Shown here piece after piece: positions 17,607 to 47,208 of a stretch of DNA of 64,000 nt; within the stretch, counting starts at the first letter, position 1; every line of letters starts with the position of its first letter. Location: the IMG/VR virus record IMGVR_UViG_3300009034_000001, positions 124,001 through 188,000 of that record, one strand, 5' to 3'. The position numbers were made by a program, and so were the translations under genes. The notes below the pieces were generated by a model that saw nothing but the letters and a program-made list of their open reading frames with translations, searched no databases and was not told the DNA's origin.

Positions 17607-18635
17607 TTATTTTGCAAAGTTGTCATATTTCCTCAAAACGGAATCATCCATCAGATGATTTAAAACGAGATCCGAAACACTTTTTATACGCTTGTTTGAC
17701 CACCTTAGATAAGTTCCCAGTTTAAGTACAAACTCCTTTCCAAGAGCTTCGTGATGCACGTAGGTACTTCTATCAAGTTTATGAACCCGCACAAACGGTT
17801 TTGCAATGTCATGGAGCAATAAAGCCCACGCTACCTCAATATCCAACGAATCGCATACTGAAGAATAAGCATCAAGCGCAGTTAAAGTATGTTCCCATAA
17901 ATCACGGTTGTGCCATTTGTTATTCTGATCGTAATCTACTTGAACTGAGAGTTCAGGTAAAATATAATTGAGTACTTCAGTTCTATCCAAGAAACTTAAT
18001 CCTCTTGAAGGTTTATAACTCAGTAACAATTTGTCAATTTCTCCAACCCAACGTTCCTTACTAACACCCAATATCTTATAATTCACTTTTTTTGCACAAT
18101 CTTCCGTCTTAGCATCAACATGAAAGCCAAGTTGTGAAGCAAAACGTGCAGCTCTTAACAGTCTCAATGGATCCTCGCGAAAACGAGACGTGGGATTACC
18201 TACAGCACGAATTAATTGCTTTTCAATATCTCGACTACCACCAAAGGGGTCTATATACCTATTACCTCTTTTAGCAATTGCGTTCATAGTGAAATCTCTT
18301 CTACTAAGGTCAGCCGTGATATTATTAACAAATTCAACTTGAGGTTTACGAGATCCAGTAATATACTTCTCTTTTCGGAACGTAGTTATTTCCACCATCC
18401 TTCCATCTACCTTCACTCCCAAAGTTCCAAATTTCTTGCCAACTAAATATGGCCTTCTTTGAGCCTTTCTAATACGGTTTTCAATTTCATCCGGAGGCAG
18501 AGGTGTAGTGAAATCGTAATCCTTCGGATCAACACCCATCAGCTCATCCCTAACGGAACCACCTACGAGATAGACAGGACAAACCAAGCCTTCAACGTAT
18601 TTAACAATCTCTTTATGTGTCATCCTCTTTGCCAC
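17607..18635 (-). CDS. CCA-adding enzyme / poly(A) polymerase family NTase with HD domain
   Basis: VGGSVRD, DYDFTT, RRDFTMNA, EDPLRLLRAARF, LLHDIAKP. Confidence 0.9.
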   Translation of the reverse strand: MAKRMTHKEIVKYVEGLVCPVYLVGGSVRDELMGVDPKDYDFTTPLPPDEIENRIRKAQRRPYLVGKKFGTLGVKVDGRMVEITTFRKEKYITGSRKPQVEFVNNITADLSRRDFTMNAIAKRGNRYIDPFGGSRDIEKQLIRAVGNPTSRFREDPLRLLRAARFASQLGFHVDAKTEDCAKKVNYKILGVSKERWVGEIDKLLLSYKPSRGLSFLDRTEVLNYILPELSVQVDYDQNNKWHNRDLWEHTLTALDAYSSVCDSLDIEVAWALLLHDIAKPFVRVHKLDRSTYVHHEALGKEFVLKLGTYLRWSNKRIKSVSDLVLNHLMDDSVLRKYDNFAK

Positions 18636-19438
18636 TATGCCCGCTCCTTCCAGAAGTCCTTAATGATACTTGTGCACAACTCGTTTGCCTTATTAAAATT
18701 TGGCTTTGCAGGTAACTTGCTCCTTACAAATGCTTCTTCGGCTAACTTGAATAAATGTTGTGCTTCATCTTGCACCTTTTCAAGTGGCCATTCCCCTCGT
18801 TTAATAGCAATTAACTGTTGTCTATCGTGTCTCAGCACATTGAGTTCACCTGTAATCAATAGTTCTATTCCCATCTTGAGTAACCTAATCAAGTGGCCAG
18901 CATTCTTACAGTCATAGCCAAACTTCTCAACCAACTCTTTCCTCTTTTGTCCCATGTAGCCTTCAAATCTGAAATGTGTCATCCGTCGTAACTGTCCGTA
19001 AGCATAGCCAGTAAAAGACTTATAACATTGTTTAGATATGAACATATCACGGTTTTCGATAAGTCGGTTTCCCAAATCAGTTTTTAGGATGTAATGGTTT
19101 GGACTAAGCCATAATAAACCAAGCACATTAGGATTTCCCTTAAGCAACAACCGTATATATTTCTTAATGTCGTATACAACCAAATCGATACTTCCTTCGA
19201 AACAGTCATAACTCTCAAACTTCTTTAATCCAAGATAGTAATCTTTTGGAGAAACAGAAACGCCTATAATGTCAATATCATCAATATGACTTGGCACGTA
19301 GGTTCCATGTGCTTTACTACCACGGTATCCTCTAAGAATACAATCTTTATGGTATGGACAGAAGCCGAGTTGAACTGCACGAGAACAAAAGCTAGAATTT
19401 CTACTGTCACATAGACTACAATCTTTCCATCTGTCCAT
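18635..19438 (-). CDS. Pol-beta-superfamily nucleotidyltransferase (RlaP/YcgL-like)
   Basis: GSKAHG..DDIDIIG, KGNPNVL, HLIRLL, IKRG. Confidence 0.8.
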   Translation of the reverse strand: MDRWKDCSLCDSRNSSFCSRAVQLGFCPYHKDCILRGYRGSKAHGTYVPSHIDDIDIIGVSVSPKDYYLGLKKFESYDCFEGSIDLVVYDIKKYIRLLLKGNPNVLGLLWLSPNHYILKTDLGNRLIENRDMFISKQCYKSFTGYAYGQLRRMTHFRFEGYMGQKRKELVEKFGYDCKNAGHLIRLLKMGIELLITGELNVLRHDRQQLIAIKRGEWPLEKVQDEAQHLFKLAEEAFVRSKLPAKPNFNKANELCTSIIKDFWKERA

Positions 19439-19526: not shown

Positions 19527-20576
19527 TCACCTCATTTGAACAAATTTGTGTATCTGAGTACCAAGGATGACGTCCTTACCTTTCCAAAAGTTAGACATCA
19601 AAATATCCGCAACGTTACTCAATCGTTTAAGGTATTCATTAACATCAAACGGGACCGGAGACACTGGAGACAAAACAAAGGCTGCGGTTGACATTTTTTC
19701 TACTACATACTTTGCAAACTCTAGATCTTCAATGCCGTCCAGAAGTAACTTGAACTGAACGAAAGGCCGAGGATGTTGTGGATCAAAGAAATGCTGTCTT
19801 TGGTCTAGCCAGAAACGTTTGTAAATCTTCATGGGAACGTCCAAATTGTTTTTAACCTTTGAACTCGGTCCTTTTATATCTACGGAAATCAAGCCATTCA
19901 CCAAGTCAAACACCTCAGGGTTCCAAATTGTGCCATTGGTTTGTAGCATTATTTGGCAACCAAATCGACGTAACATATTTATCAAATACTTAGCGGCTGA
20001 AGGTTGATGTAGCACCTCACCGCCAGTAAGGAAAATCACACTATTTCTTAACGGACTATATTCATCATGTGCGTTAACACAATGAACTTCATCAAGTAAC
20101 CGACGAATCGACCAATTCTGACCTTTTCCCCAACTATACTTTGTGTCGCAATATGGACACTGGAGGTTACACCCCGAAAATCTAATAAATGTAGCAGGGG
20201 TTCCCACCTCATGTCCTTCGCCACAAACGGACCGGAACACATCTTCAGCAAGCCTTACTGGAACCGTTCTTTCAAACCAAGCTTGTGGCAAATCATTCAA
20301 ATCTTCTTCATACAAACCTAAATACTCTATCTTATGAGAACGGTAACTGTTTACCGCGTCAACAAAATATTTAAAGTATCCAGGAATGTCAAATCCGCCA
20401 AAATATTCAATAAAAAGTTGTGGGTGTTTAATATAACAATCCGGACTGATTATACCATCAGGTTGTGGATAGCAATTCTCAAAATCCAAACCCAAATCGT
20501 GGAAAAAGTAAATAATCTTGTCAATTTGATTAGCAAACATATCTTGGAATTTTATTTCGATCTTTTTTCCAGTCAT
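19527..20576 (-). CDS. queE: QueE 7-carboxy-7-deazaguanine synthase (radical SAM) with ~100-aa N-terminal PD-(D/E)XK-like domain
   Basis: FRSVCGEG..GTPATFIRFSGCNLQCPYCDT, TGGE, QTNG, QIHK. Confidence 0.85.
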   Translation of the reverse strand: MTGKKIEIKFQDMFANQIDKIIYFFHDLGLDFENCYPQPDGIISPDCYIKHPQLFIEYFGGFDIPGYFKYFVDAVNSYRSHKIEYLGLYEEDLNDLPQAWFERTVPVRLAEDVFRSVCGEGHEVGTPATFIRFSGCNLQCPYCDTKYSWGKGQNWSIRRLLDEVHCVNAHDEYSPLRNSVIFLTGGEVLHQPSAAKYLINMLRRFGCQIMLQTNGTIWNPEVFDLVNGLISVDIKGPSSKVKNNLDVPMKIYKRFWLDQRQHFFDPQHPRPFVQFKLLLDGIEDLEFAKYVVEKMSTAAFVLSPVSPVPFDVNEYLKRLSNVADILMSNFWKGKDVILGTQIHKFVQMR

Positions 20577-21588: not shown

Positions 21589-22170
21589 TTAAAGTAAATC
21601 AAATTTGTTAATATACCTATACCATTTATTCCGAGGTGTTATTGGATACAATAACGACGTTCGTCTATCCCGTTTGCCAACTGGAAGCAAATACGTAGGC
21701 ACAATAACATTCAGAGTCAAACTTTTATCTTGTAAAATAAAAATGGTAATGTTACTGTCATACCGCGCGACATACGGACAAAATTTGTAACCTCTAGGAT
21801 CTAATTGTACCTTTGAAGCCAAAAGTCTTACAATTTTATCATTAACACGAATGTAGCTACCACGCGAGACTCTCGTAACCACAAATCCTTTCCTTTTTAG
21901 AAGTTGTGTAAATTCCTCCTTTGCACGTGAAAACCAACACTTGCCCCACGAGAAAGTCTTACACCTATTTACTACTCTTTCGCGTTTCTGACTTAAACCT
22001 AACTTATCAATAACTTGTCGAGCGTACTCCCTTGTAAAACCAAAGTATCTACCAATATCTGCCTTAGAACACAGTGGATCGTGATACATCCGCATAAACT
22101 GTTGCATAGCGCCGGGACCATAAAGTTCCTCAAATTTATCCTTAAAAGTTTGGCTCCTTCGCCTTCGCAT
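21589..22170 (-). CDS. HTH-containing basic DNA-binding protein
   Basis: KADIGRYFGFTREYARQ resembles a sigma region 4 type HTH. Confidence 0.45.
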   Translation of the reverse strand: MRRRRSQTFKDKFEELYGPGAMQQFMRMYHDPLCSKADIGRYFGFTREYARQVIDKLGLSQKRERVVNRCKTFSWGKCWFSRAKEEFTQLLKRKGFVVTRVSRGSYIRVNDKIVRLLASKVQLDPRGYKFCPYVARYDSNITIFILQDKSLTLNVIVPTYLLPVGKRDRRTSLLYPITPRNKWYRYINKFDLL

Positions 22171-23227
22171 TGTACGCCTCCTTCAGTTCGTTCAAACTAA
22201 TTACCCCCTTTTTATACGCTTCCCACTTTAGCCAGAAGAAGTAGGTGTAACACACATGATCTCGCAACTCCTCCGATCCAAATTCAAACATGTCATCCTT
22301 AAGGAAATGTGCTGAATCAAACTTTCTCAAACCAGCTCGCAGTCCATCAATACAAAAGTTCATAAATTCCTTAAACCTTTTCTCATCAAAAGAGTTCAAG
22401 CCTTCGTATTTACTATCCCTATCAAACAAGCTAACCAACTGTGCAAATGGAATACGAAGAAGGTTAGGTCTATTCTTGAAAACCCAGATAAGTCCTGGCA
22501 TGTACCGCATTTGAACACAATATTCAGGGAAAAGTGGACTTTCCCGTGGATCTTTATCATAAGTCGTTTTATCTTCCCCAAGCGCAGACAACATTGCAAC
22601 GTTGCGCTCAACACATAAATAACATTGGCCACAATGTAACTTATATGGAATACTTCTACCCTTTATTGTACCTCTATCATAGTAAAAACAGCTGTTCGTT
22701 TCATATATCAAATCGCCAACTTGGTCATGACACAGTTTAACACGATCACACTTTATGGTTGCATTTCCAATGTCATCCAACGTCCAAAGTTTGCACTGAG
22801 GATCTTTCCCATGAATGTAGTTCTGTAACTCTTCAGTATTGCTGTCTTTTGTTGACACCGACCACCAATTTACCCAAGTTTCTGGCCCACCACCTTTATA
22901 CTCGCCCATTCCAATGTCAGCACCCGGGAACCGTTCCAATGTCCAATCAATCATATACTGATTCCTTTTAGGTAGCATATCTCGCGTCATCATGTATTTC
23001 CGATCTGAAAAAATAAGCGGTTTCGGAATATCAAAACCTTCCTTAGTGCACTTATTCCATAAGTTCATAACGGTTCGAACTTCGCGTACACAATAGCCTT
23101 CACCTTTCCACCTAACGTATATTGGCTGTGGTTTAATTAATCCAAGAGTCTGATTGCAACGAGCAAGCCAAGTCAACACGGCCAGTGAATCCAATCCGCC
23201 TGAAAATAGCACAATAGCTTTTTTCAA
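22142..23227 (-). CDS. queC: QueC-like PP-loop ATPase (7-cyano-7-deazaguanine synthase family) with C-terminal extension
   Basis: KKAIVLFSGGLDS, PKRN, TNSCF, HCGQCYLCVER zinc site. Confidence 0.75.
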   Translation of the reverse strand: MKKAIVLFSGGLDSLAVLTWLARCNQTLGLIKPQPIYVRWKGEGYCVREVRTVMNLWNKCTKEGFDIPKPLIFSDRKYMMTRDMLPKRNQYMIDWTLERFPGADIGMGEYKGGGPETWVNWWSVSTKDSNTEELQNYIHGKDPQCKLWTLDDIGNATIKCDRVKLCHDQVGDLIYETNSCFYYDRGTIKGRSIPYKLHCGQCYLCVERNVAMLSALGEDKTTYDKDPRESPLFPEYCVQMRYMPGLIWVFKNRPNLLRIPFAQLVSLFDRDSKYEGLNSFDEKRFKEFMNFCIDGLRAGLRKFDSAHFLKDDMFEFGSEELRDHVCYTYFFWLKWEAYKKGVISLNELKEAYNAKAKEPNF

Positions 23228-25531: not shown

Positions 25532-26404
25532 TTACATAATCCTAGACGCCTTACTACTCCAACTCGTATACAAGTGTCCATCTGGTAAATGTATAACGCT
25601 CTTGAAGCCATCTTTGTACTCATTTACAACACATGTTGCAACGGTAACTTGCAATCCACTGTTGAAAACGTCATAGACCACTTCGCCCCAAGGTAGCCAA
25701 ATAATACTTCTGGCCTTCTTGTGTAAAACTAACCATTCTAAAGCATCTCTAGCAACTTGAATATCAACAAAGTTGTCTCGACTCCATTGAGTTACCGAGT
25801 TCTCTTTCGAATTTTCAGGTATCCACAATTCCCTAAAGACAATTGAATCCACTCCAAGTGAAATTGCACGCTTAATATAGTTGATTATTGTTGTTTCATT
25901 ATAAACGCCTTGTTTATTCATCACGCACGAAAGTCGGACAGTTACATCCGCTTTCTCTTTTAAAAACTTAAACAATTGTGTATAATCTAGATGAATTCCC
26001 ATCAATTCATAATTGAGTTCAAAATCTAACGAAGCAACTGTTATTGTAACGTTTGTTAAGCCATACCTCGGCTTTATAAGCCATTCCAAAAATTCATCCT
26101 GTCTATCCAGAACCAAAGACATGTTGCTATGTAAATCTCGTTGCCCGAATCCAACTAAGGAACACTCGAGTAAAATATTACTCAAATAAACCCAATCAAC
26201 TCCCAAGAGAGTTTCGCCTTTACTAGTGAGAATTGCGGTTTGTGCATTGCCAGCCCTTGCCCACATCAACGAGTTTCGTAACTTAGCAAAGTCTAAGTCG
26301 TTCCTACCAGACTTTGGAGTCTGTGACATCGCGGAAATGCAATATTTACACTTGGCATTACACCCTTGAACTGCAGGAACAATGGAAATGGATTGAACAT
26401 CCAT
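25532..26404 (-). CDS. radical SAM protein, function unknown
   Basis: CNAKCKYC motif, KGETLL. Confidence 0.8.
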   Translation of the reverse strand: MDVQSISIVPAVQGCNAKCKYCISAMSQTPKSGRNDLDFAKLRNSLMWARAGNAQTAILTSKGETLLGVDWVYLSNILLECSLVGFGQRDLHSNMSLVLDRQDEFLEWLIKPRYGLTNVTITVASLDFELNYELMGIHLDYTQLFKFLKEKADVTVRLSCVMNKQGVYNETTIINYIKRAISLGVDSIVFRELWIPENSKENSVTQWSRDNFVDIQVARDALEWLVLHKKARSIIWLPWGEVVYDVFNSGLQVTVATCVVNEYKDGFKSVIHLPDGHLYTSWSSKASRIM

Positions 26405-27078: not shown

Positions 27079-28293
27079 CTATATAACCCTTTTAAGCCTT
27101 ATTGTGTTAAAGTTATACTTCCTTCCCTTCTTGGCACAATTAATCCACATTCCAAGTGACCTTTGAACAATATCCGCGGTAAAGTCAAACTTGCCATCAA
27201 ACATAGACGAGCCAACACCATAAGCATAAACCGGCAAATCTAACCTTTCAAATTTGGAAATCTTCTCCGGCGTAAATCCGCCACTAACTACAATCTTAAT
27301 ATCACTAAAGAATTGACGTCCTACGCTCCCTACCTTAAAGTCCAAAGACCTGTTTCGTAATGCTAAAAAAACATTTTTTACCAATTGTGGGTTGACTCCA
27401 GTTATTTCATGTAAATTATGCGGCACAAATGTACCTTCATCATCTATAGAATCCAACACCGACTTATCCACCATCGTTCCAGATGTATCTAGTCTTACAC
27501 CAAACAGTTTGTATCGTGGATCTCTTGTTTCCTGATATTTTAACCACATTGCATTTGCAACATCCAAAGATGTCTTTACGGAATCGTTGTCAAAATCAAC
27601 AAGCACAACTCTCTTTACCATTGGATCAATAAATTGACAAAACTTAAGTGTAGCCGTTACTGTATCTCCGCCATAGGCAGCAATTAATCCATGAGGCATC
27701 GTTCCAATGCCTTTTTCTCCCCACCACCAACCTTGGGCGTCAGTCGACACGCCTCCGCATAATGGCAGACCAGCAGCTTCTCTGCCAACAGAATAAGAGT
27801 ACCCATCTTTAGGCTGTACAGTATAACTATCAAATCTGGCAGGAAAGAAAAGAATTGGTTTACCCTTCGCAGCTTTCACGCACCTATAAACATTAGTTGC
27901 AACCTTAGTACCTCTCGCTAAAGTGCCCAAGTATACAGTCTCAAGATGTGCAAACAGTGAATAATCGCCCTCAATTAACATTACCGTTTCCCAAGCGTTT
28001 ATAATATCGCCATCACGTAAAGACCTAATCGTAAGCTTTTCAAAACTTGTGTTTAAAATTTGTTTCATTATATGAATTGACTCATCAATGCCACACAAGC
28101 ATGCGTTATTATTCTTCTGGAAAATCTGAATCCTGACAATGGGACGATGATGATCCCACTCCAAAATTCGTTTGGTATTGTTGAAGTATTCGTCGGTGTA
28201 GCTTCCAAACTTTATCACAGGTTCAACTTTTACACGATTACAATTTAATTTCATATTCCTTACCCTTTTTATCTGGTTTGTAGGTTGTCTCAC
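27079..28293 (-). CDS. nicotinate (or nicotinamide) phosphoribosyltransferase family
   Basis: YTDEYF, GTMPHG, LVDFDND, GVRLDTSG, VSGGF, YGVGS. Confidence 0.85.
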   Translation of the reverse strand: MRQPTNQIKRVRNMKLNCNRVKVEPVIKFGSYTDEYFNNTKRILEWDHHRPIVRIQIFQKNNNACLCGIDESIHIMKQILNTSFEKLTIRSLRDGDIINAWETVMLIEGDYSLFAHLETVYLGTLARGTKVATNVYRCVKAAKGKPILFFPARFDSYTVQPKDGYSYSVGREAAGLPLCGGVSTDAQGWWWGEKGIGTMPHGLIAAYGGDTVTATLKFCQFIDPMVKRVVLVDFDNDSVKTSLDVANAMWLKYQETRDPRYKLFGVRLDTSGTMVDKSVLDSIDDEGTFVPHNLHEITGVNPQLVKNVFLALRNRSLDFKVGSVGRQFFSDIKIVVSGGFTPEKISKFERLDLPVYAYGVGSSMFDGKFDFTADIVQRSLGMWINCAKKGRKYNFNTIRLKRVI

Positions 28294-31484: not shown

Positions 31485-32399
31485 CTAAACGCCTAAATCA
31501 ATCTTGTAAGAATCCACTGTCTTTTGTAGACCATCTTTAAACGGGCTTGGTAAATACCCAAGAATATTCTTTGAATTTGTAATATCAAAACTGACATCTC
31601 TAATGTCACCAAGCCTTTGTTGAACATGTCGAGCTTCCATAGATGCGCCGGTAATTTGTTTTAAATAACTAAAGAGTTCATTTACAGTATGTGACCGGCC
31701 ACTTCCAATGGGAAAGGATTTGCCACAAACAAGTTGCTTTGGTACAAAAGCAGCTAACACGTTTGCAGTAACAACATCTTCAACATAAACAAAGTCCCTA
31801 GTTTGTTCTCCATCACCATAAATTTCAACTGGCTCGCCAGTTAAAAGCGCCCTAGTAAATTTCGGCACTACGGCAGCATATTCTAAATGTGGATTCTGCC
31901 TTGGTCCAAACACATTTGAATAACGCAGTGAAACGGTTTCCAGGCCATACAATTCATAGAAAAGTCTCAAATAATGTTCGCAAGTCAGTTTTGTTACTCC
32001 ATATGGCGACGCAGGCTTAAAGTTGTTGTTGGCACCGTAAACCGAGCCCGAGGATGCAAAAATAAAACGTTTCACGTCAAATTCTCGAGATGCTATCAAC
32101 ATATTCAAAGTGCCCAATACGTTATTTGCATGACTTTCTATTGGATTATCGACGGAACGTTTTACAGAACCAATTGCAGCAAGATGTAACACAAAGTCCA
32201 TTCCATAGCACATAAAACGACAGGCCTCAAGGTCTTTAATGTCGCCACGCCAAAACCGAGCTTTCGAATTTACATTTTCAATTTTTCCATTGGATAGATT
32301 ATCCAAAACGGCAACAAGTTGGCTATTATCGCACAAATAGTCCACAAGGTGTGAGCCAATAAAGCCCGCTCCACCAGTCACTAGCCACTTATATTTCAT
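31485..32399 (-). CDS. NAD-dependent NDP-sugar epimerase/dehydratase (extended SDR)
   Basis: TGGAGFIGSH, HLAA, ASSGSVYG, YGVTK, NVFGPRQ, GDGEQTRDFVYV. Confidence 0.92.
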   Translation of the reverse strand: MKYKWLVTGGAGFIGSHLVDYLCDNSQLVAVLDNLSNGKIENVNSKARFWRGDIKDLEACRFMCYGMDFVLHLAAIGSVKRSVDNPIESHANNVLGTLNMLIASREFDVKRFIFASSGSVYGANNNFKPASPYGVTKLTCEHYLRLFYELYGLETVSLRYSNVFGPRQNPHLEYAAVVPKFTRALLTGEPVEIYGDGEQTRDFVYVEDVVTANVLAAFVPKQLVCGKSFPIGSGRSHTVNELFSYLKQITGASMEARHVQQRLGDIRDVSFDITNSKNILGYLPSPFKDGLQKTVDSYKIDLGV

Positions 32400-32653: not shown

Positions 32654-33112
32654 TTACTTGTATACAACTATAAACCTGTCATCCCAAATTTTCAACACTG
32701 GCTTAACCGTGGTTTCCCAATTCAAACGTCCATATCCACAACCAGGTCGAGGAATATAAATCTCCTTAATATCTGGAGATTCATTAACATATTGTAACAG
32801 TTCCCATGCACTCCTCTCAATTAACTGAATATCTGCAGGGCCCATAAAATTTCGAGGTTTAACAGGGAAAGTAAAGATTGAATACTTTCCGTACTGACCA
32901 AGAAACCATACATGGTTACCTCCCATGGTTATCTTAAATCCAATGTCATGTGCAATCTCCGGGAACCTTTCCTTAGCCTCAAGTGCACATCCTCTCCCCA
33001 TGACGCATTGATTATAGCGAGTAACATATCCATTTGTGGTTATAGCAATATAAGGACCAAGACTCCAAATATTTCGTTTAAGTTCAAGCATAAGCTTTAT
33101 ATCACCCCTCAA
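32654..33112 (-). CDS. macrodomain protein (DarG/TARG1-like ADP-ribosyl hydrolase)
   Basis: TTNG, VMGRGCA, FPVK, PRPGCGYGRLNW. Confidence 0.8.
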   Translation of the reverse strand: MRGDIKLMLELKRNIWSLGPYIAITTNGYVTRYNQCVMGRGCALEAKERFPEIAHDIGFKITMGGNHVWFLGQYGKYSIFTFPVKPRNFMGPADIQLIERSAWELLQYVNESPDIKEIYIPRPGCGYGRLNWETTVKPVLKIWDDRFIVVYK

Positions 33113-33657
33113 TTTTCATACAATCTTAGTGGTCTATTCTGGTAATTCCAAATTTCTGACAATGTTCACATCTACATGGGCCTTTCCACCGCCACCGATC
33201 TTCAGCTCCCATAAGGCAATAAGTTTTAATTTTGTCTCGCTTTCGGCGTTCATTAGGAATAGCCAAATTCATGTGAAGATGGAATTTTCGAGTTACGAAG
33301 TCATCAAAACTTTTCAATAATTGTTGATCCGATAAATGAATGTTGTAAGTACAATGAGAAAACCAAGTTAAACACCAAGTTTCAAGTTCAAAAAACACAC
33401 AACCCAATCTTTTTAATTTCGGATTTTTACTTAATAAAGTAACCTTTGTTCTTGGATGTTCTTTCCTTAGATGGTCTTCCCACCAGTCAATAGTATCCTG
33501 TCTTGCTTGATTCATACCAGGGTCCTCTCGGTACATCCTGTTAAAACTTACAAAGCCATCCTTGAAATCATCGTGGTCATACCAAGCAGAGACTATGTAA
33601 ATAGGGTATCTTTTCTCATTCATATCTTAATCTCCATTTATAAACACGTCAAAGATG

Positions 33658-33813
33658 CTACTCCTCAACAGGAAGGTCATCCGTATCACCAAGTACCCAT
33701 TCCAATGCGGTTCTAACGCCTTCCTCGTAGGACAAGCCAAAACACTTCCCTTCCGTTTCATGACTTACATTAATCTGCTGAACAATCTCAGATTCAGTTC
33801 TTGGGACAAACAT
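33658..33813 (-). CDS. 51-aa protein related to the 7430/7689 paralogs (absent from ORF track)
   Basis: GGAGG RBS; ...SYEEGVRTALEWVLGDTDDLP. Confidence 0.65.
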   Translation of the reverse strand: MFVPRTESEIVQQINVSHETEGKCFGLSYEEGVRTALEWVLGDTDDLPVEE

Positions 33814-34374
33814 TACAACATCCTCCTTCAATTGAATGAATATAAACCTACAATAAAATGACTATCCGCGTATCAAGCCAACAATCTCGCCTAATATATG
33901 GTCAACCGAAGCAGTATCCAAAGCTCCAAGTTTCCTCCACTTGTTTATAACCATCTTAAATCTGTAACTACAATCGTAAACCACTTCAGCAAGTTCAATT
34001 TTCGCCCTTTTTAACTCTTGAAGTTCCTTTTCGTCTTCAGGCTCGTATAACGCGAAGCAATTGCTATCTTTTGCGTACTTTATATACTCGCGTTTTCTCA
34101 TGTTACCCTCCAATTTTTTTTCAAACTTTATTATATAATACCTTTGCCAGAGTTAGCAAATTCCTAAGACCTTGCCAAATTGTTAATTTCTGTTCAAAAT
34201 ATTTACACTCGCCGTGAATGTTTTCTAACTTGTGGCTAAGGCCTCTACGTTCGCGTGTGTAACGATTTGTTATTATCACTTTTGAACATGTTTCTATCCC
34301 AAATATCCCCATTAAATATACCTTGAAAAATTTACACTCTTCACAATATACTTTTTCCATCTCCTTCACCTCGA

Positions 34375-35307
34375 TCAAAATGCATAATTTACTATGCTGC
34401 CTTTAGAAACCTTCTTTATATTCAAACGTTTCTTACTTCCAAAAATCACCCAATCATCAAAGCCAACAAAAGGTTTGTAAATATAGCCAACATAAGTGTA
34501 GTACTGTTTTAATACCTTAACAGTATCACCCAACGTGCGACTTCCCGTGCCTAAACCGGTTATAACATATGGAACGGTAAAATGACAAAAGTAAACAAGC
34601 TCCCTGAACTTAGCTAATTCATTCCCTTCATGCCAATCGTCAGGTTGACAAAAGAACACATCGTTATATAGTAACGCTTCCAGAACGTCATAACGTTTAT
34701 GAAAAACTTTATAACGTTTCTCCGGCATAACCGTTGGCATACCAAGATAGACAAGTTGTATAACATCTGGATTCAAAACATTTTGTAAAAACATATTTGC
34801 ATCGCCAAATCGGAAGTCAACCTGGTTAGGCTTAATCCTTGAAGTCATCCTCTCTAAATACTTCTGATTCTTCTTCACAAGTTCATTTACCGGAACTTGT
34901 AAGTCATGAACATAAATATGTTCCAACCATGCCATAATCTGTGCAGCACGAGAAAAACTTTGTGGCTGTTTCTTAAATATATAGTCAGCAATGGCCTTTA
35001 CAGTCTTCATTCTATCGCAGCATATCACATTGAGACCTTTTCTAGCACATCCATAAGGTAAGTCCAACCCACACGCAAAAGGTATAACAACTTGTTCAAC
35101 ATCAGGTGGGATATTTTCAACAATTTCATCTAAGATTAACCGTTGGGAACCCAAGATGCGAGTATCAAATATAATATCACGATCGAACTCCGGCTTATTC
35201 TTTACAGTTAATTCAAGCCTTTCATAGTTATCCGACTCTAATGATCTCACAAATTGTTTTAATCTGTCAATCCAAAGTTGATTCGCTTTATTTCTTGGTT
35301 TCTTCAT
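34375..35307 (-). CDS. D12-class DNA methyltransferase-like protein with altered motifs
   Basis: LGSQRLIL..I, IPFACG, NVICCD, DAN, LVYLGMP where DPPY is expected. Confidence 0.55.
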   Translation of the reverse strand: MKKPRNKANQLWIDRLKQFVRSLESDNYERLELTVKNKPEFDRDIIFDTRILGSQRLILDEIVENIPPDVEQVVIPFACGLDLPYGCARKGLNVICCDRMKTVKAIADYIFKKQPQSFSRAAQIMAWLEHIYVHDLQVPVNELVKKNQKYLERMTSRIKPNQVDFRFGDANMFLQNVLNPDVIQLVYLGMPTVMPEKRYKVFHKRYDVLEALLYNDVFFCQPDDWHEGNELAKFRELVYFCHFTVPYVITGLGTGSRTLGDTVKVLKQYYTYVGYIYKPFVGFDDWVIFGSKKRLNIKKVSKGSIVNYAF

Positions 35308-36086
35308 CGTACATACACCTCACTAGCAAAGGCACGTAACTTCATACAATTGTTCCAAATCTGGAGTAACACTTTCGGACCAACCTTGATCGAAAAGTCG
35401 AGATCAAATGGACTTGGTTTTTCAAAAGTGCCAAACTGACTAATTTCCTTACCGGCTAACGCAAGTTTGGTTGGATCTCCAGTATCAAGACGTAAGTACA
35501 AACCAGCGTGTCGATATCCCATTAATTCCAATCCACCATCTGAAGGCATACCTAGTAAATGAATAACCTTGTTTATTGTTAATTTACTTAACAGGTAACT
35601 TAAAAACCTCAAACGATTTATGCCAGGATGAGTTGAAAACAACGCGGGCAATAAACCTCTATAGCCAAACCCGATCGAGTAAATCTCAGGGTGTTGATTA
35701 AACCAATTAAAACTTTGAACTAGAGATTCAAGTTCCAAACCTTGAACAACGCCCATGAACTTTATATCTGGACCAAAGGCATCACGAAATAATTTTATTG
35801 AACGATCGGCTGTGCGAATTGTCTTCTGTGCATCCTTCCAAATGTCAGGCAATACTACTTCATTAGGCTGTGTCAACTCAATCTTTTCGCACATCTTTTC
35901 AGCTTCCATTGCAACGCCGCACTCAACCGCGCCGTTATCCAAAACTTTCCACTTTGAATTCTGTGAGTAGAACTTGGTATAAGCATTACTTGGTTCTACT
36001 AAGTGTGCCAGTAACAAATGAAAATCTTGCAAACTGTCAAAGTCGTCCAAATATGCAGTTGGCACACAAAAACTAAACTCTATCAT
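35304..36086 (-). CDS. TGT-fold protein, candidate DNA 7-deazaguanine transglycosylase (DpdA-like)
   Basis: VLDNGA, VLPD, GVVQG, IGFG, HLLG, LDTG occur in TGT barrel order. Confidence 0.65.
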   Translation of the reverse strand: MIEFSFCVPTAYLDDFDSLQDFHLLLAHLVEPSNAYTKFYSQNSKWKVLDNGAVECGVAMEAEKMCEKIELTQPNEVVLPDIWKDAQKTIRTADRSIKLFRDAFGPDIKFMGVVQGLELESLVQSFNWFNQHPEIYSIGFGYRGLLPALFSTHPGINRLRFLSYLLSKLTINKVIHLLGMPSDGGLELMGYRHAGLYLRLDTGDPTKLALAGKEISQFGTFEKPSPFDLDFSIKVGPKVLLQIWNNCMKLRAFASEVYVR

Positions 36087-36725
36087 AATACACCTCCGTC
36101 TCGTGTCTCCTGTCCTTCCTTCACGACAGATTGCAACCTTTTGTACATAAGTTCACTTGTTAAAAAGCCACTCCCCAGTTTTGCAAATAGTAGAACTAAA
36201 GCCGGAATCCAAGCTTCTCTACCAAGGTAAAATCCACAAAGGAATAGGGTAACTGTAGAAAGCCTACCAACAACTTGCAACCCGTTTTGATAAAAACGAG
36301 AAGATTTAAGTGCCGTCCTTTCCATTACTAAGCTTTAATAGTAAAAATTCTCCTTTAGTATTGAGATAAATGCCAATTTCACCTTTATCAATGCTTTCGA
36401 ACCAAATTTTAATCAGTGGCGGCGGTGGCATTAGTTTCCACACAGACAAAATCACAGCCCACTTAAAAGCACGTTTTTCGTCCACGGATACCTCTTCGGA
36501 AGTGTCCACCACACCACTAATGGCCTGAGTCCCAGGTAAGATGTTGAGGATATCCGTTGATTCAACTTGTGTAGATTTCGAAACATTTTGTTCACTTTTA
36601 CGGCTAAAATATAACAGTGCTATTACAATAACGACAGTTATAATTATAATAGAAATTTCGCTCACCGGCCTCGATTTTTCTGTGGACTATACTAGAATTT
36701 TAAACATACGGGTATAATGAAGACA

Positions 36726-37229
36726 CTATATAAGTACAACAACAAGAAGTATTGTGGTTACTATTTGGACAATTGTTCCAAGTGCGTCTCTTATTACCTT
36801 CTGCCTTTCCATCTTAATCAACTGGTTCTGGGTATCAACAAAAATCTTGTAATATGTATCTCCTCTAGCCTGTTCTAATTGCAACAAATCAATCATAGAA
36901 TTAAGTAATCTTGTCTGGATACCAAGTTTTTCAAAATATAACTTAGCAACTTCGTGATATTCCTTGCCTTGCCGTACCTTAGCCACCAGCTTATCATGTT
37001 CCTTAACCAAATAGCCAATCACTTCCTTGCCATCAGGTGTCTGCATTTCTATTGGTATTGGCTTTTCTATCTTCCGCTGTTCGATTTCAGTCAGCAAGTC
37101 CTTCGTCTGAGCAGACTTTTGAATTTCGATGTGGTTAAGTGGAATATGCTTTAAATAAGCAGGGCCGCAACCACTAATCCCAAGAGTCATTAAGACTATC
37201 AATAGACTCCTTAGCATCTTTGCTATCAT
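36726..37229 (-). CDS. lipoprotein, o-spanin-like
   Basis: Lipobox-like LGISGC; overlaps upstream TM/coiled-coil gene in lysis cassette; also has a C-terminal hydrophobic segment. Confidence 0.5.
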   Translation of the reverse strand: MIAKMLRSLLIVLMTLGISGCGPAYLKHIPLNHIEIQKSAQTKDLLTEIEQRKIEKPIPIEMQTPDGKEVIGYLVKEHDKLVAKVRQGKEYHEVAKLYFEKLGIQTRLLNSMIDLLQLEQARGDTYYKIFVDTQNQLIKMERQKVIRDALGTIVQIVTTILLVVVLI

Positions 37230-37533
37230 GTTTCCCTCCTAACCTTTCTTTGACCCTCTTGTCGAAGTTGTTGATTCGATCATCAACCTCTTTCAATTGA
37301 TCTTGAAGATATAATATTTCTTCTTCTTTACTTTCGATTTCACTTGTGGTCTTAGCTACTTTTTTCAAGTCTTCGGTAATAGCCAATTTGTGTTCCAAGC
37401 GTTGTTTCTCATGTTTCTGGTTAAGCTTGCCGATTAAATACCAAAACACAATAAGAAGTCCCACAAGAAAAGGTATGAACTTGTAACCTTTCTTAATGGT
37501 ACTTTTAATTATGTTCCACAAACTTTTCAACAT
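37174..37533 (-). CDS. i-spanin-like protein
   Basis: N-terminal TM plus coiled coil, downstream of holin and endolysin. Confidence 0.5.
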   Translation of the reverse strand: MLKSLWNIIKSTIKKGYKFIPFLVGLLIVFWYLIGKLNQKHEKQRLEHKLAITEDLKKVAKTTSEIESKEEEILYLQDQLKEVDDRINNFDKRVKERLGGKHDSKDAKESIDSLNDSWD

Positions 37534-37564
37534 AACACCTCCTGACGTTATTCCTGAACTGCGG

Positions 37565-37864
37565 TTACACCTTTATTCGTCCGCCACCTAACTGTTTTAT
37601 CTTTTTTGCAACGTGCACGCCACTACTCGTTAACCAAGTACGTACAGTTGCTGTTTTAAAGACTTCACGCATTCCGTAAATAACGCCATAATTAGCCACA
37701 TTAAAGGTTGTCCAATTACCTCCCGAGATGTGACTATGTGTAACCAACCACGTTGAAACCCAAAGGCCACTTATGATGCCCCAAGTTTTCAAACTGATTA
37801 CATTTTCAACAATCTTGTATAAAGCAGCTTTCCAAAATGATTCTTCCACTTTCTTTTCTGCCAT
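37565..37864 (-). CDS. putative holin
   Basis: Small, two hydrophobic segments, basic C-terminus, next to endolysin. Confidence 0.45.
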   Translation of the reverse strand: MAEKKVEESFWKAALYKIVENVISLKTWGIISGLWVSTWLVTHSHISGGNWTTFNVANYGVIYGMREVFKTATVRTWLTSSGVHVAKKIKQLGGGRIKV

Positions 37865-37959
37865 TGTTACCCCCTTTACTTCGTTATATCATCTTAATAG
37901 TTAGTCCAATTACTAAGGAAAATTACAGTTAAAAACACATCTCTTATGTTAAGAAATAT

Positions 37960-38475
37960 TTAAACTCTATTCAACCAGCCTTTTAAATACTTTGTAAGCT
38001 CTGGCCTACGTTCAGATAGCTTGATATATCTGACAACTTCCTCACAACGATATATCTTAAGTAAGGCTTTAGACCAACCATCCTCAATAAGCAAATTCAA
38101 ATTGTACAATGTTTTAGGGCCAATATCTCCATCCAGCATCAAATACGCTGGTTCCCCAAGTACCATAGTAAGTTTATTTACTGTACGTTGTAAGGTAACG
38201 GATGCTGTCTTTACGCCTACGTTCACAGCATAATCCAAAATTTCTGTTGCTAAATCCTGATCCTCAATGTAAACACCTTTTATTGGACACCAGTAATCGC
38301 AGTCATAAATTTCAGTTGCTTCATCCTTGGTTAAACTTTTAATGTCAACAGCTGGATGTGCACGTTTAGAGATTCCATATTTTGTTTCTCCACCCGGATC
38401 GTCGGGATCATTTACATATCCGCCTTCATGTTCAAAGATTACAGGCATTGCTTTCTCTAGTCTGGCCATAAACAT
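37960..38475 (-). CDS. endolysin, glycoside hydrolase family 108
   Basis: HEGGYVNDPDDPGGETKYGIS, DGDIGPKT, GWLNRV. Confidence 0.92.
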   Translation of the reverse strand: MFMARLEKAMPVIFEHEGGYVNDPDDPGGETKYGISKRAHPAVDIKSLTKDEATEIYDCDYWCPIKGVYIEDQDLATEILDYAVNVGVKTASVTLQRTVNKLTMVLGEPAYLMLDGDIGPKTLYNLNLLIEDGWSKALLKIYRCEEVVRYIKLSERRPELTKYLKGWLNRV

Positions 38476-39135
38476 TTACCTCCTGAAGTCTTTGTGTTTC
38501 AACTTAGTTACTATACGTTTACCCGACCGAGCTTTTAATTCAACCAATGGCTTCAACACAAGTCCCTCAGCAAGAAAGTCGCCAAAGCTCGATTTAAGTC
38601 CACGTTTAACAGTCATTATAGCATCATCAATAGTTCCTATGCTAAGGATTTGGACAATATCAATTCCAAGCTTCGTTGCAATATCTACCATATTTCCCCT
38701 TTCAAGCCACCAATCATTAATTAATATGTCAAATAGTATGAAACTCTGTCCATCGCGTATGTAATTGCCCCCTTTCTGAATTCCGGCGCCATAACCTTCG
38801 CCATACAAAGTCACGTCCTGCATTCCAAACATTTTCTTAAACTTTTCAACAGGGAACATTTTATTAAGTACCTCTAGCAATAGTGGGGGCATATTCGCAT
38901 TATCGGTTTTTCCTCTAAACGAAACTTTATCCGCATCGTTAATTTCAATCCCGTTGTTTGCAACGGTTCTGTAAATTACCCTGATGTTCATTCCGTCAAT
39001 TTTCTCGGTCCCAACCCAGAAGTTATCCTTCAAGTATTGAAATTCAGGCCGAGTCCAATCACCTTCGATGAAGTAATTTGGTTTCTGTGACATATCGCGT
39101 TTGAAGATACTTTGAATTTTAGGATACTCCTTCAC
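38476..39135 (-). CDS. RNA ligase (Rnl2-like adenylation domain)
   Basis: TEKIDGMN, YGEGYG, FILFDI, AEGLVLKP, TKLK. Confidence 0.85.
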   Translation of the reverse strand: MKEYPKIQSIFKRDMSQKPNYFIEGDWTRPEFQYLKDNFWVGTEKIDGMNIRVIYRTVANNGIEINDADKVSFRGKTDNANMPPLLLEVLNKMFPVEKFKKMFGMQDVTLYGEGYGAGIQKGGNYIRDGQSFILFDILINDWWLERGNMVDIATKLGIDIVQILSIGTIDDAIMTVKRGLKSSFGDFLAEGLVLKPLVELKARSGKRIVTKLKHKDFRR

Positions 39136-42269: not shown

Positions 42270-42680
42270 TTAACCAAAAGTAGCCCAATTGGTTGGAGTT
42301 TCGTACACTGTAACCTCCTTAACAATAAGAGACTGTGTATTTAACTGACTTGATAGAATGTTATAGATATATCTCGACATAACTTCTGCTGTTGGCTGAT
42401 CCTCTGGTAATAAAACAACTTCATTGCCAAGATTATATAAATGTCGAAACAGCTCATCATCGGAAGACGATAAAATTGTAGCATGATCAAACTTTTCAAG
42501 GATCTTCTTTAATTCCATTTTCAAAATACCAAAATCAATAACCATTCCCTGATTCAAAGTACCTTTACAAACCGTTGCAATAACCTTATAAGTGTGGCCA
42601 TGAAGATTCTTGCATTTACCGTCGTATTCCGGTAATCGATGTGCAGCGTCAAAAGTCATCTCAATACTAACGCAATACAT
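42270..42680 (-). CDS. queD: QueD 6-carboxy-5,6,7,8-tetrahydropterin synthase
   Basis: FDAAHRL, CKNLHGHTY, MVIDF, FDH, PTAE, VYETP. Confidence 0.93.
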   Translation of the reverse strand: MYCVSIEMTFDAAHRLPEYDGKCKNLHGHTYKVIATVCKGTLNQGMVIDFGILKMELKKILEKFDHATILSSSDDELFRHLYNLGNEVVLLPEDQPTAEVMSRYIYNILSSQLNTQSLIVKEVTVYETPTNWATFG

Positions 42681-45636: not shown

Positions 45637-45714
45637 TGGTCTGGAAGGGAGGATTTGAACCTCCAACAACCTGGCTCCAAACCAGGGGCTCTATCCAGAC
45701 TGAGCTACTTCCAG
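45637..45714 (-). tRNA. tRNA-Pro(UGG), encoded CCA, A37/G38
   Basis: CTGGAAG...CCTGG-TTTGGAG-CCAGG...GGTTCAAATCC...CTTCCAGACCA; C1:G72 and A73. Confidence 0.93.
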
Positions 45715-46218: not shown

Positions 46219-47208
46219 TTACCTAAAGAAACAAAACCGTTCTAATTCAAATTCACTTTCTGACATTAACTTGCGGTAAATTTGAGCAGCACAGAAAATG
46301 TCTTGAATAGCCAACCCGGTTGAATCAAATACTGTTATTGTATCTAATGAAGGAATAACCGACTTCCTACCGGTAACAATTTCGCCAATATCCGCGTATA
46401 TATATGTTATATCAATTAAGCCTTTTGCAAGAGGCACATTAATTTCTCCACTTATTGATGCCTGTTCCCGATCATCAACAACTACCGTAGCAACATCAAG
46501 AATTGAGATATCTAATTCACGTTTGCCGGGTGCATCCGCGCCAATTGCGTTAATATGCATTCCATTCCGCAACCACTCCAGTCTAACTATTGGAATTAAA
46601 GACGGCGTTGTTGTAATAACGACATCAGCCACACGTAAAGTGTCTTGAACTGTAGAAGAAAGTTCACCTTTTATACCAAATTTGAAATGTGCCCATTGTA
46701 AAAACGTCACAGTATTTTTCTCATTAATATCCCAAGCAGTAACTTTCTCAATTCCAGGTCTGACAACCAACAAAGCTTCTAGTTGCGTCCTTGCTTGGAC
46801 TCCCGCGCCAATAAAAGCGGCTACCTTTGAATCTTTGCGAGCAAGATACTTCACTGCAACACCACCCGCAGCTCCAGTTCGCATGTTTGTAATATGTGTT
46901 CCATCCATAATTGCGATTGGAAAGCCAGTCTCCGGATCAAATAATGTTATAGTTGCCATTACTGTAGGCAAACGTTCATTCCGAGGATGAACACTCACAT
47001 TCTTTACGCCTGCAAGGTTGACCGATGGAATATAAGCAGGCATACAACGTAAGTCGCCTTTTAAAAATTGTAAATAAACCTTGGGCGGAGCTTGCACTTG
47101 ACCCCGGCCAAATTGTTTAAATACGCTTTCCACGGCATCTATATATTCCGGCATACTAAAAGCCTTTTCAATTTGGGAACGCGTAATTATATAGGTTGTC
47201 TTGTTCAT
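46219..47208 (-). CDS. ornithine cyclodeaminase / mu-crystallin family (archaeal-type alanine dehydrogenase-like)
   Basis: PPKVYL..GDLRCMPAY, RTGAAG, GAGVQA, INAIGADAPGKRE, FDSTGLAIQD. Confidence 0.9.
   Translation of the reverse strand: MNKTTYIITRSQIEKAFSMPEYIDAVESVFKQFGRGQVQAPPKVYLQFLKGDLRCMPAYIPSVNLAGVKNVSVHPRNERLPTVMATITLFDPETGFPIAIMDGTHITNMRTGAAGGVAVKYLARKDSKVAAFIGAGVQARTQLEALLVVRPGIEKVTAWDINEKNTVTFLQWAHFKFGIKGELSSTVQDTLRVADVVITTTPSLIPIVRLEWLRNGMHINAIGADAPGKRELDISILDVATVVVDDREQASISGEINVPLAKGLIDITYIYADIGEIVTGRKSVIPSLDTITVFDSTGLAIQDIFCAAQIYRKLMSESEFELERFCFFR

What the first reader, a model, noticed from the sequence alone, without database searches (positions are those of the whole stretch)
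34375..36086. TGT/DpdA-like gene translationally coupled to a methyltransferase fold lacking DPPY
Seen: the TGT-barrel gene overlaps (ATGA, 35304-35307) a D12-class MTase-like gene whose FxGxG reads FACG and whose DPPY reads GMPT. Established: phage DpdA proteins insert 7-deazaguanines into DNA, some phages further tailor the base, and DPPY is required for amino-MTase chemistry on A/C. Inference: the partner may be a repurposed tailoring enzyme or base-flipping specificity factor producing an undescribed deazaguanine derivative.
Basis: partly seen in the sequence, partly recalled or inferred. Interest (0 to 1): 0.75.

Follow-up and report, generated by a model that had tools for sequence, protein, structure and literature searches.

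The report
Dam-like partner in deazaguanine DNA module
An uncultivated 241-kb phage carries a DNA guanine-swapping enzyme (DpdA3-like) joined to a Dam-type methyltransferase look-alike that lacks the Dam catalytic motif. That look-alike always travels with an unusual QueC-like enzyme, so the phage probably makes a 7-deazaguanine DNA base by a route not yet described.

Summary
On the minus strand, a 260-aa gene (35304-36086) ends in ATGA, which also starts a 310-aa gene (34375-35307).

- **260-aa protein:** it folds as a TGT barrel. It is a distant relative of the DpdA3 DNA transglycosylase of Flavobacterium phage immuto.
- **310-aa protein:** it is a class-I methyltransferase fold closest to DpnM and Dam. 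It reads PFACG at motif I and YLGMPT where Dam has DPPY.

The interpretation needs adjusting. ATGA overlaps are common in this genome (31 of 393 same-strand neighbour pairs), so the overlap alone says little.

The strong evidence is comparative. The MT-like family is tiny, with 8 representatives among 1.8 billion. It sits next to a divergent QueC-like PP-loop gene in 5 of 6 foreign contexts, usually with a Zn-ribbon gene, a DpdA3-like gene, QueE and FolE.

The DpdA3-like proteins that travel with it form one clade. Thirty-seven other DpdA3-like loci lack it, and no GenBank phage has it. The window phage also encodes FolE2, QueD, QueE and the QueC-like gene, but no QueF.

Best reading: this is a conserved 7-deazaguanine DNA-modification module. 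A Dam-derived protein with a remodelled target pocket acts on the deazaguanine together with QueC'. The chemistry is untested, and the complex prediction gave no answer.

The parts
35304..36086 (-). DpdA3-like DNA-guanine transglycosylase candidate, 260 aa. TIM-barrel TGT fold without the Zn subdomain. Family-invariant D50, D81, Q115 (VQG), H176-L-L-G179 and D201 (DTxxP).
   Evidence: ORF. tblastn to immuto DpdA and others, with its annotation and QueD/QueE/FolE/QueF neighbours. Immuto is a DpdA3 phage per PMC10516641. Invariant columns. AF2 pLDDT 81. Foldseek top hits are TGT, and also Cap10. No Pfam, NCBIfam or TGT model hit.
34375..35307 (-). Dam/D12-derived methyltransferase-fold protein, 310 aa. 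Motif X reads GSQR, motif I PFACG, motif II D98, and motif IV YLGMPT instead of DPPY. A family-invariant GxGxG lies at 251-255 and FxD at 283-285.
   Evidence: ORF. Pfam D12 hit below cut-off, with 4 of 8 members hitting D12. DpnM profile hit with the motif IV alignment. AF2 pLDDT 77. Foldseek and VIA best matches are DpnM and Dam. AFDB and Atlas neighbours are adenine MTases. Family alignment and invariant columns.
35304..35307 (-). ATGA start/stop overlap between the two genes.
   Evidence: Sequence. The overlap type is frequent in this genome: 31 of 393 pairs.
22142..23227 (-). QueC' : a divergent QueC-like PP-loop ATPase (SGGLDS; Cys cluster TxSC...CGxCYLC) fused to a small C-terminal domain. 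That domain is a separate Zn-ribbon-like gene in relatives. This is the constant neighbour of the MT-like gene in other phages.
   Evidence: Weak QueC hits. BLAST to L005, L006, L007 and L009 neighbours, including the fusion. Alignment. PDB profile hits to Cap9, QatC and QueC. NCBIfam QatC-like C-terminal region. Atlas neighbours are all QueC.
19527..20576 (-). QueE-like radical-SAM 7-carboxy-7-deazaguanine synthase with a roughly 110-aa N-terminal extension.
   Evidence: Pfam Radical_SAM/Fer4_12. The best NCBIfam hits are all QueE models, though below their cut-offs. BLAST to QueE of L005, L006 and L011.
42270..42680 (-). QueD (6-carboxytetrahydropterin synthase).
   Evidence: PF01242 at 121 bits. 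TIGR03367 QueD at 91.7 bits, above its cut-off of 89.25.
34121..34378 (-). 85-aa Cys-rich ORF joined to the MT-like gene by a TTGA overlap. It has no detectable relatives and its membership of the module is unknown.
   Evidence: ORF and sequence. No Pfam or PHROG hit. It does not match the Zn-ribbon HMM of the module.
36083..36325 (-). 80-aa hydrophobic ORF joined to the DpdA-like gene by an ATGA overlap. It is probably the tail of the lysis cassette and not part of the module.
   Evidence: ORF and sequence. No family hit.

Best explanation
The pair is one half of a conserved phage module for putting a 7-deazaguanine into DNA.

Shown:
- The phage encodes FolE2 (outside the window), QueD, QueE, a divergent QueC-like ligase (QueC', with a Zn-ribbon domain), a DpdA3-like transglycosylase and the MT-like protein.
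- The MT-like protein, QueC' and this DpdA3-like clade are inherited together in diverged phages.

Inferred pathway: GTP is converted to CDG by FolE2, QueD and QueE. QueC' activates the C7 carboxylate. The DpdA3-like enzyme exchanges guanine in phage DNA for the deazaguanine.

Inferred role of the MT-like protein: it is a Dam descendant. It keeps the cofactor-binding half of Dam (GxQR helix, PFxxG after strand 1, Asp at the end of strand 2). Its target-base pocket has been rebuilt: DPPY became G[T/M]PT, and a new invariant GxGxG loop follows strand 5. It therefore no longer methylates adenine N6.

Most likely it binds SAM, flips out the 7-deazaguanine (or handles its precursor), and modifies the C7 substituent in concert with QueC'. 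The product would be a methylated or otherwise tailored derivative not among the eight known ones.
For: - **Pathway genes in the same genome:**
- **Missing genes:** no QueF, no canonical TGT and no type-I FolE in the genome.
- **DpdA3-like identity:**
- **Module conservation:** in L005 and L007 the genes run MT-like, QueC', Zn-ribbon, DpdA3-like in one tight operon next to QueE and FolE2. L006 has the same set rearranged, with an intein in QueC'. L010 and L011 show MT-like followed by QueC', and L011 also has FolE, QueD and QueE.
- **Co-occurrence:** MT-like and QueC' scans of IMG/VR return the same 3 contigs.
- **Phylogeny:** DpdA3-like proteins with the module form one clade (96/89, 0 of 500 shuffles as low).
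- **Dam ancestry and motif IV replacement:**
- **Position of invariant residues:** they fall on the canonical cofactor and target-pocket elements of the model, namely the helix at 54-64, the strand 1 loop, the end of strand 2, the strand 4 loop, the strand 5 loop and the strand 6/7 hairpin.
- **Charge:** 6 of 7 family members are basic (pI 8.5-9.6) while DpdA3-like proteins are acidic to neutral, which fits a nucleic-acid-binding partner.
Against: - No chemistry was tested.
- One family member (P0018, in an intact L007 operon) lacks both the motif I glycine and the motif II aspartate. SAM binding may therefore not be the conserved property.
- The region corresponding to Dam's DNA-recognition domain is short, helical and highly variable in the family. 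This argues against sequence-specific DNA recognition.
- The three-chain complex prediction gave no answer.
- The MT-like structural matches to Dam (Z 15) stand only slightly above many other class-I methyltransferases (Z 14-15) and spermidine synthases.
- The family is known from few, related phages that also share a UDG-PolA type polymerase. Part of the synteny may therefore be shared ancestry.
- All tree branches in the clade are long.
Confidence: 0.42

Rival explanations
1. The MT-like protein is a non-catalytic adaptor. It is a Dam-derived DNA-binding, base-flipping subunit that presents a DNA base to a partner enzyme. The partner could be QueC', converting DNA-embedded dCDG to the amide or nitrile on DNA, or the small acidic DpdA3-like barrel, presenting G for exchange.
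For: - The catalytic DPPY is lost in every member, and P0018 also lacks the SAM motifs.
- The MT-like family is basic while DpdA3-like proteins are acidic.
- QueC' is far from canonical QueC, scoring under the Pfam cut-off, and always comes with the MT-like gene. That fits a changed substrate.
- PMC10516641 argues that DpdA3 may insert CDG and reports that DpdA3 alone did not work in E. coli.
Against: - Six of 7 members keep the motif I glycine and the motif II aspartate.
- The invariant residues line the pocket rather than a surface.
- The TRD-equivalent region is variable.
- Other DpdA3 phages manage without it.
- The predicted complex gave no answer.
Confidence: 0.25
2. QueC', the DpdA3-like protein and the MT-like protein form a nucleobase-protein conjugation system like type IV CBASS Cap9/Cap10. 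QueC' would link CDG to an amine of a protein, possibly the MT-like protein's conserved N-terminus, and the TGT-like protein would bind the adduct.
For: - The QueC' profile's best PDB hit is Cap9, followed by QatC.
- The DpdA-like model also matches Cap10.
- Cap9/Cap10 deazaguanylate a partner enzyme's N-terminus (PMC11996544).
- Four of 7 MT-like proteins share an N-terminal M-x-KPR motif.
Against: - The phage carries a full de novo CDG pathway, typical of bulk DNA modification.
- The TGT-like protein groups with DpdA3 of phages whose DNA is fully modified.
- It keeps the invariant Asp, Gln and Gly motifs.
- The Cap9 and Cap10 hits are weak and no better than the QueC and TGT hits.
Confidence: 0.05
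3. The MT-like gene is an ordinary or decaying orphan DNA methyltransferase that merely lies next to the DpdA-like gene in a densely packed phage operon.
For: - Four-nt overlaps are common in this genome.
- The genes upstream and downstream are joined in the same way.
- The Pfam hit is to D12 adenine methylases.
Against: - The protein family is conserved at 24-48% identity, with invariant pocket residues and the same non-DPPY motif in all members.
- It stays with QueC' and DpdA3-like genes through several rearrangements.
- The same protein is found 100% identical in a second contig.
Confidence: 0.08

Closest known systems
DpdA3 subfamily of phage DNA guanine transglycosylases (Flavobacterium phage vB_FspM_immuto, Cellulophaga phage phiST, Campylobacter phage CP220; Cui et al. 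2023, PMC10516641)
   Same: - A small TGT barrel of about 260 aa without a Pfam TGT hit.
- Full-length similarity to immuto DpdA.
- Shared invariant D, VQG, HLLG and DTxxP motifs.
- Found in a genome with FolE, QueD and QueE.
   Different: - Only 24.5% identical to immuto DpdA.
- Belongs to a separate clade that is the only one travelling with the MT-like and QueC' genes.
- No QueF, DpdN or DpdL equivalents were found, so the inserted base is unknown.
D12-class (alpha-group) N6-adenine DNA methyltransferases: DpnM (2dpm), E. coli Dam, T4 Dam
   Same: - Best structural and only sequence-profile match.
- Same order of motif X, I, II, then IV.
- G-x-(K/Q)-R helix, PFxxG, and Asp at the end of strand 2.
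   Different: - DPPY is replaced by G[T/M]PT (DTPT in one member).
- The SNS-type strand 5 loop is replaced by an invariant GxGxG.
- The DNA-recognition domain is reduced to variable helices.
- The score is below the Pfam cut-off.
- It is embedded in a deazaguanine pathway.
[quoted passage not shown]
   Same: A phage protein that tailors a 7-deazaguanine and is encoded beside the dpdA and que genes.
   Different: - Unrelated fold: DpdM is a metal-binding CxxxCxxCC protein.
- DpdM needs preQ1, and hence QueF, which this phage lacks.
QueC and QueC-like ligases Cap9 (type IV CBASS) and QatC (Qat defence), for the partner QueC'
   Same: A PP-loop SGGxDS motif and a C-terminal Zn-type Cys cluster. 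Cap9 shows that QueC-like enzymes can couple CDG to amines other than ammonia.
   Different: - QueC' scores at or below the Pfam QueC cut-off.
- It carries or is followed by an extra Zn-ribbon domain.
- It is always paired with the MT-like gene.

Membership tests
TGT/DpdA superfamily (DpdA3-like) for 35304-36086 | TIM-barrel TGT fold | tested here: met
   AF2 pLDDT 81. The top Foldseek PDB hits are TGTs, at E 7e-6 and TM 0.63 by query.
TGT/DpdA superfamily (DpdA3-like) for 35304-36086 | Match to the curated TGT profile (PF01702) or an NCBIfam DpdA/TGT model | tested here: not met
   No hit. The DpdA3 founders were likewise found only by HHpred.
TGT/DpdA superfamily (DpdA3-like) for 35304-36086 | Conserved catalytic and recognition motifs: Asp nucleophile in D-x-x-x-P, VQG, LLGxG and upstream Asp residues | tested here: inconclusive
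   D50, D81, Q115, H176, L178, G179 and D201 are invariant in the family. Their equivalence to TGT D102, D156, Q203, G230 and D280 rests on my knowledge of TGT motifs, not on a residue-level superposition.
TGT/DpdA superfamily (DpdA3-like) for 35304-36086 | Sequence relationship to an experimentally linked DpdA3, and a genome context with deazaguanine synthesis genes | tested here: met
   Immuto DpdA at E 6e-7 over 98% of the length. FolE2, QueD, QueE and QueC' are in the genome.
TGT/DpdA superfamily (DpdA3-like) for 35304-36086 | Guanine exchange in DNA | not testable with these tools
   Needs nucleoside mass spectrometry.
D12-class N6-adenine DNA methyltransferase for 34375-35307 | Class-I MTase fold closest to Dam and DpnM | tested here: met
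   DpnM Z 15.1 with 210 residues aligned, and Dam Z 15.0. Foldseek ranks DpnM and Dam first. The profile hits DpnM at E 0.002.
D12-class N6-adenine DNA methyltransferase for 34375-35307 | Pfam PF02086 gathering score | tested here: not met
   16.2 bits against a cut-off of 22.
D12-class N6-adenine DNA methyltransferase for 34375-35307 | Cofactor motifs X, I (FxGxG) and II (acidic residue at the end of strand 2) | tested here: inconclusive
   GSQR, PFACG and D98 align to Dam and DpnM GGK(R/Y), PFVG(A/G) and D. They are kept in 6 of 7 members and lost in P0018. SAM binding was not tested.
D12-class N6-adenine DNA methyltransferase for 34375-35307 | Catalytic motif IV (D/N/S)PP(Y/F/W) | tested here: not met
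   GMPT here. It is G[T/S]PT or DTPT in all relatives, and it aligns to DPPY of DpnM.
DpdM (DUF3109) preQ1-DNA methyltransferase for 34375-35307 | DUF3109 fold with a CxxxCxxCC metal site | tested here: not met
   No such Pfam hit, and the fold is Rossmann-type MTase. The DpdM features are taken from PMC10516641.
QueC family for partner 22142-23227 | PP-loop SGGxDS motif and a C-terminal Cys cluster | tested here: met
   SGGLDS, plus invariant C180, C199 and C205 in the four full-length members; the fourth Cys (CYLC) is Pro in L007. PDB hits to Cap9, QatC and QueC.
QueC family for partner 22142-23227 | Pfam PF06508 gathering score | tested here: inconclusive
   The window protein scores 20.8, below the cut-off of 22. 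The L005 orthologue scores 22.8.

The most novel reading that the evidence does not exclude
A Dam-derived base-flipping protein has been recruited as the DNA-handling subunit of a QueC-like ligase. DpdA3 would insert 7-carboxy-7-deazaguanine, and the MT-like/QueC'/Zn-ribbon trio would then finish the base on the DNA itself. The product could be an amide, a nitrile, or a conjugate with a new amine, with or without methylation. That would be a new 7-deazaguanine DNA base and a new use of the methyltransferase fold.
Probability: 0.2. Interest if true: 0.8.

Novelty: new variant of a known kind. Interest (0 to 1): 0.62.

Why it matters
Eight 7-deazaguanine DNA bases and their enzymes are known (PMC10516641). 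That study could not get DpdA3, the subfamily linked to complete G replacement, to work in its E. coli test system.

This module adds two undescribed, co-inherited components to a DpdA3-like enzyme: a Dam-derived protein without DPPY, and a divergent QueC with a Zn-ribbon.

If the MT-like protein tailors or presents the base, three things would follow:
- a new phage DNA modification, relevant to restriction and CRISPR evasion;
- a second, unrelated solution to deazaguanine tailoring besides DpdM;
- a concrete set of genes to co-express to get a DpdA3-type system working in the laboratory.

It would also be a clear case of an amino-methyltransferase scaffold being retargeted.

Tried and rejected
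- **Three-chain complex prediction** (DpdA3-like + QueC' + MT-like): scores 0.00, 0.38 and 0.00, verdict 'no answer'. It is not used as evidence either way.
- **GenBank phage searches** with the MT-like protein, a second family member and QueC': no match. The nucleotide search found no close phage.
- **Widening the family** added nothing beyond the 8 representatives. The profile word-index search gave 3 hits, the IMG/VR scan 3 contigs, and the metagenome scan only L006 again.
- **Alignments A3 and A6** were too diverse for pattern scans.
- **hhalign of the family against single-sequence E. coli Dam** was insignificant (E 0.25) but aligned motif X and I as expected. It is used only as an illustration.
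- **Pfam PF22555 'DAM-like-phage1'**, suggested by the Atlas, had no match in the genome.
- **Promoter and terminator scan** of 33000-38500 showed nothing above shuffles.
- **BFVD structural search** gave only generic adenine methylases.
- **Relationship to DpdM** was rejected on fold and on the absence of QueF.
- **Records behind L005, L006, L009 and L011** could not be searched as whole contigs. DpdA presence in L009, L010 and L011 therefore stays unknown.
- **Two literature searches** for a Dam-like partner of QueC/TGT found nothing.
Full report
**Setting**

The window is bases 124001-188000 of a 241,415-bp virus record, estimated 98% complete, with 39.6% G+C. Almost all genes are on the minus strand. 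Near-identical sequence occurs in sediment and marine metagenome runs. A second IMG/VR contig of 173 kb carries both proteins at 100% identity. No GenBank phage is close at the nucleotide level.

**Observation**

The 260-aa ORF at 35304-36086 and the 310-aa ORF at 34375-35307 overlap by ATGA, with a GAGGTG ribosome-binding-like site upstream of the second start. The N-terminus of the second protein aligns from its first residues with homologues, so the start is right.

The overlap is not distinctive. Thirty-one of 393 same-strand neighbour pairs in this genome overlap by 4 nt. The flanking small ORFs are chained in the same way.

**The upstream protein (260 aa)**

- It has no Pfam, NCBIfam or TGT-model hit. 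It has only two PHROG hits of unknown function.
- tblastn finds the annotated DpdA of Flavobacterium phage immuto over 98% of its length (E 6e-7). That gene sits among QueD, QueE, FolE and QueF.
- Cui et al. 2023 place immuto among the DpdA3 phages whose guanines are completely replaced.
- Thirteen database relatives and two phage proteins share invariant D50, D81, Q115, H176, L178, G179, E187 and D201.
- From my knowledge of TGT, these resemble the VQG, LLGxG and D-x-x-x-P signatures. I did not superpose residues.
- The AF2 model (pLDDT 81, pTM 0.83) has TGTs as best PDB matches and also matches Cap10.

I therefore file it as DpdA3-like. This rests on fold, distant homology and context, not on a curated profile.

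**The downstream protein (310 aa)**

- Pfam D12 MTase scores 16.2 bits, below the cut-off of 22. Four of eight family members hit the same model.
- An exhaustive HMMER search of 1.84 billion representatives found only seven relatives.
- The family profile hits DpnM at E 0.002. It aligns GsQR to GGKR, PFACG to PFVGG, D98 to the motif II Asp, and vYlgtPt to vYfDPPY.
- The AF2 model (pLDDT 77) is a seven-stranded class-I methyltransferase fold. DpnM (Z 15.1), Mcbe1 and E. coli Dam (Z 15.0) are the best matches.
- Many other methyltransferases and spermidine synthases follow closely at Z 14-15. AFDB, Atlas and BFVD neighbours are adenine methylases.
- Invariant family positions are G53, Q55, R56, I62, L83, Y187, P191, T192, F202, V248, G251, G253, G255, F283 and D285.
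- On the model, most of these sit on the motif X helix, strand 4 and its loop, strand 5 and its loop, and the strand 6/7 hairpin. These are the elements that line the cofactor and target pockets in this fold.
- DPPY is absent in all members. The motif I glycine and motif II aspartate are kept in six of seven, and P0018 lacks both.
- The segment that corresponds to Dam's DNA-recognition domain is short, helical and variable.
- Six of seven members are basic, while DpdA3-like proteins are acidic to neutral.

**Context, the decisive part**

Contigs carrying the MT-like relatives show a recurring set.

| Locus | Gene arrangement seen |
|---|---|
| L005 | QueE, PRTase, FolE2, then MT-like, QueC'-like PP-loop, Zn-ribbon and DpdA3-like, overlapping or adjacent |
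| L007 | QueE, MT-like, QueC', Zn-ribbon, DpdA3-like, FolE2 |
| L006 | DpdA3-like, two genes, then MT-like, QueC' (with an intein), Zn-ribbon; QueE, FolE2 and PRTase upstream |
| L010 | MT-like followed by QueC' |
| L011/L012 | MT-like followed by QueC'; L011 also has FolE, QueD and QueE within 4 kb |
| L009 | QueC' lies 1.6 kb downstream of MT-like |

IMG/VR scans with MT-like and with QueC' return the same three contigs. In contrast, 37 other IMG/VR DpdA3-like loci have neither gene within 10 kb. No GenBank phage has either.

In a tree of 47 DpdA3-like proteins, the four that travel with the module form one clade. Support is 96/89, and 0 of 500 label shuffles were as clustered, though the branches are long.

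**The window phage's own pathway**

| Gene | Position |
|---|---|
| FolE2 | C1:114001-114804, outside the window |
| QueE | window 19527-20576 |
| QueC' fused to the Zn-ribbon domain | window 22142-23227 |
| QueD | window 42270-42680 |

These are supported. The genome has no QueF, no type-I FolE, no canonical TGT and no D12 profile hit.

QueC' has the PP-loop and a QueC-type Cys cluster. It scores at or under the Pfam cut-off, and its best PDB profile hits are Cap9, QatC and QueC.

**Interpretation**

- *Shown:* the pair belongs to a co-inherited deazaguanine module. The MT-like protein's most constant neighbour is QueC'. Its adjacency and coupling to DpdA is a rearrangement in this phage.
- *Inferred:* FolE2, QueD and QueE make CDG. 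QueC' activates its carboxylate. The DpdA3-like enzyme exchanges guanine in DNA.

The MT-like protein cannot be an N6-adenine methylase, because motif IV was tested and not met. It keeps a Dam-like cofactor half and a conserved but rebuilt target pocket. I therefore favour a tailoring enzyme that acts on the 7-deazaguanine with QueC', probably SAM-dependent and probably on DNA (confidence about 0.4).

The main rival is a non-catalytic base-flipping adaptor for QueC' or DpdA (about 0.25). This is encouraged by P0018, by the charge contrast, and by the report that DpdA3 alone failed in E. coli.

A Cap9/Cap10-like protein conjugation and a chance neighbour are unlikely. The complex prediction was uninformative.

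**Novelty**

The DpdA3-like gene is a new member of a known kind. The MT-like/QueC'/Zn-ribbon trio attached to it is not in the published inventories I could search. It has no cultured representative. I rate the whole as a new variant of a known kind.

Noticed in passing
window 22142-23227 (-); L005:8863-10037; L006:9033-11205; L007:1196-2282: The QueC-like PP-loop gene is fused to a small domain in the window phage. In three relatives that domain is a separate Zn-ribbon-like gene. In L006 the QueC-like gene carries an intein with a LAGLIDADG endonuclease.
   Followed up: partly
window 36726-38475 (-): A lysis cassette lies directly upstream of the DpdA-like gene. It includes a GH108 endolysin with a PG_binding_3 domain (37960-38475). 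It also has a small membrane protein (37565-37864), a coiled-coil membrane protein (37174-37533) and a lipoprotein-like ORF (36726-37229) that looks like a spanin pair. It is unusual company for DNA-modification genes.
   Followed up: no
window 17607-19438 (-) and 38476-39135 (-); L009:1116-1766: An RNA-repair-type gene set is present: a CCA-adding/poly(A) polymerase with an HD domain, an RlaP nucleotidyltransferase and an RNA ligase. An RlaP gene also lies next to the MT-like homologue in L009, and an RNA ligase lies in the L006 module region.
   Followed up: no
window 46219-47208 (-): A full-length ornithine cyclodeaminase/mu-crystallin family gene (Pfam E 2.7e-93) sits in a phage genome. 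Its function there is unknown.
   Followed up: no
G000:C1:109647-111962 (outside the window); L005:11205-13652; L006:12542-16129: The phage and its module-bearing relatives share an A-family DNA polymerase with an N-terminal UDG domain. The L006 copy is interrupted by an intein. A 2026 paper (PMC13697223) ties this polymerase type to phages with thymine-modified genomes. These phages may therefore modify both T and G.
   Followed up: partly
window 19527-20576 (-): The QueE-like radical-SAM protein has an extra N-terminal segment of about 110 aa that is absent from the QueE of L005, L006 and L011.
   Followed up: no
window 25532-26404 (-), 27079-28293 (-), 31485-32399 (-), 32654-33112 (-): Further metabolic genes are nearby: a second, unassigned radical-SAM protein, a nicotinate/quinolinate phosphoribosyltransferase-like protein, an NAD-dependent nucleotide-sugar epimerase, and a PHROG 335 'phosphatase'-like protein.
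   Followed up: no
window 766-842 (-) and 45637-45714 (-): tRNA-Ala(TGC) and tRNA-Pro(TGG) genes.
   Followed up: no
L005:5983-6426; L006:493-924; L001:3843-4238; G000:C1:123047-123568 (weak): A small phosphoribosyltransferase gene recurs beside deazaguanine genes, in DpdA3-type phages including immuto. This hints at a base-to-nucleotide salvage step in these pathways. In the window phage the match is only weak (E 1.7e-4).
   Followed up: partly
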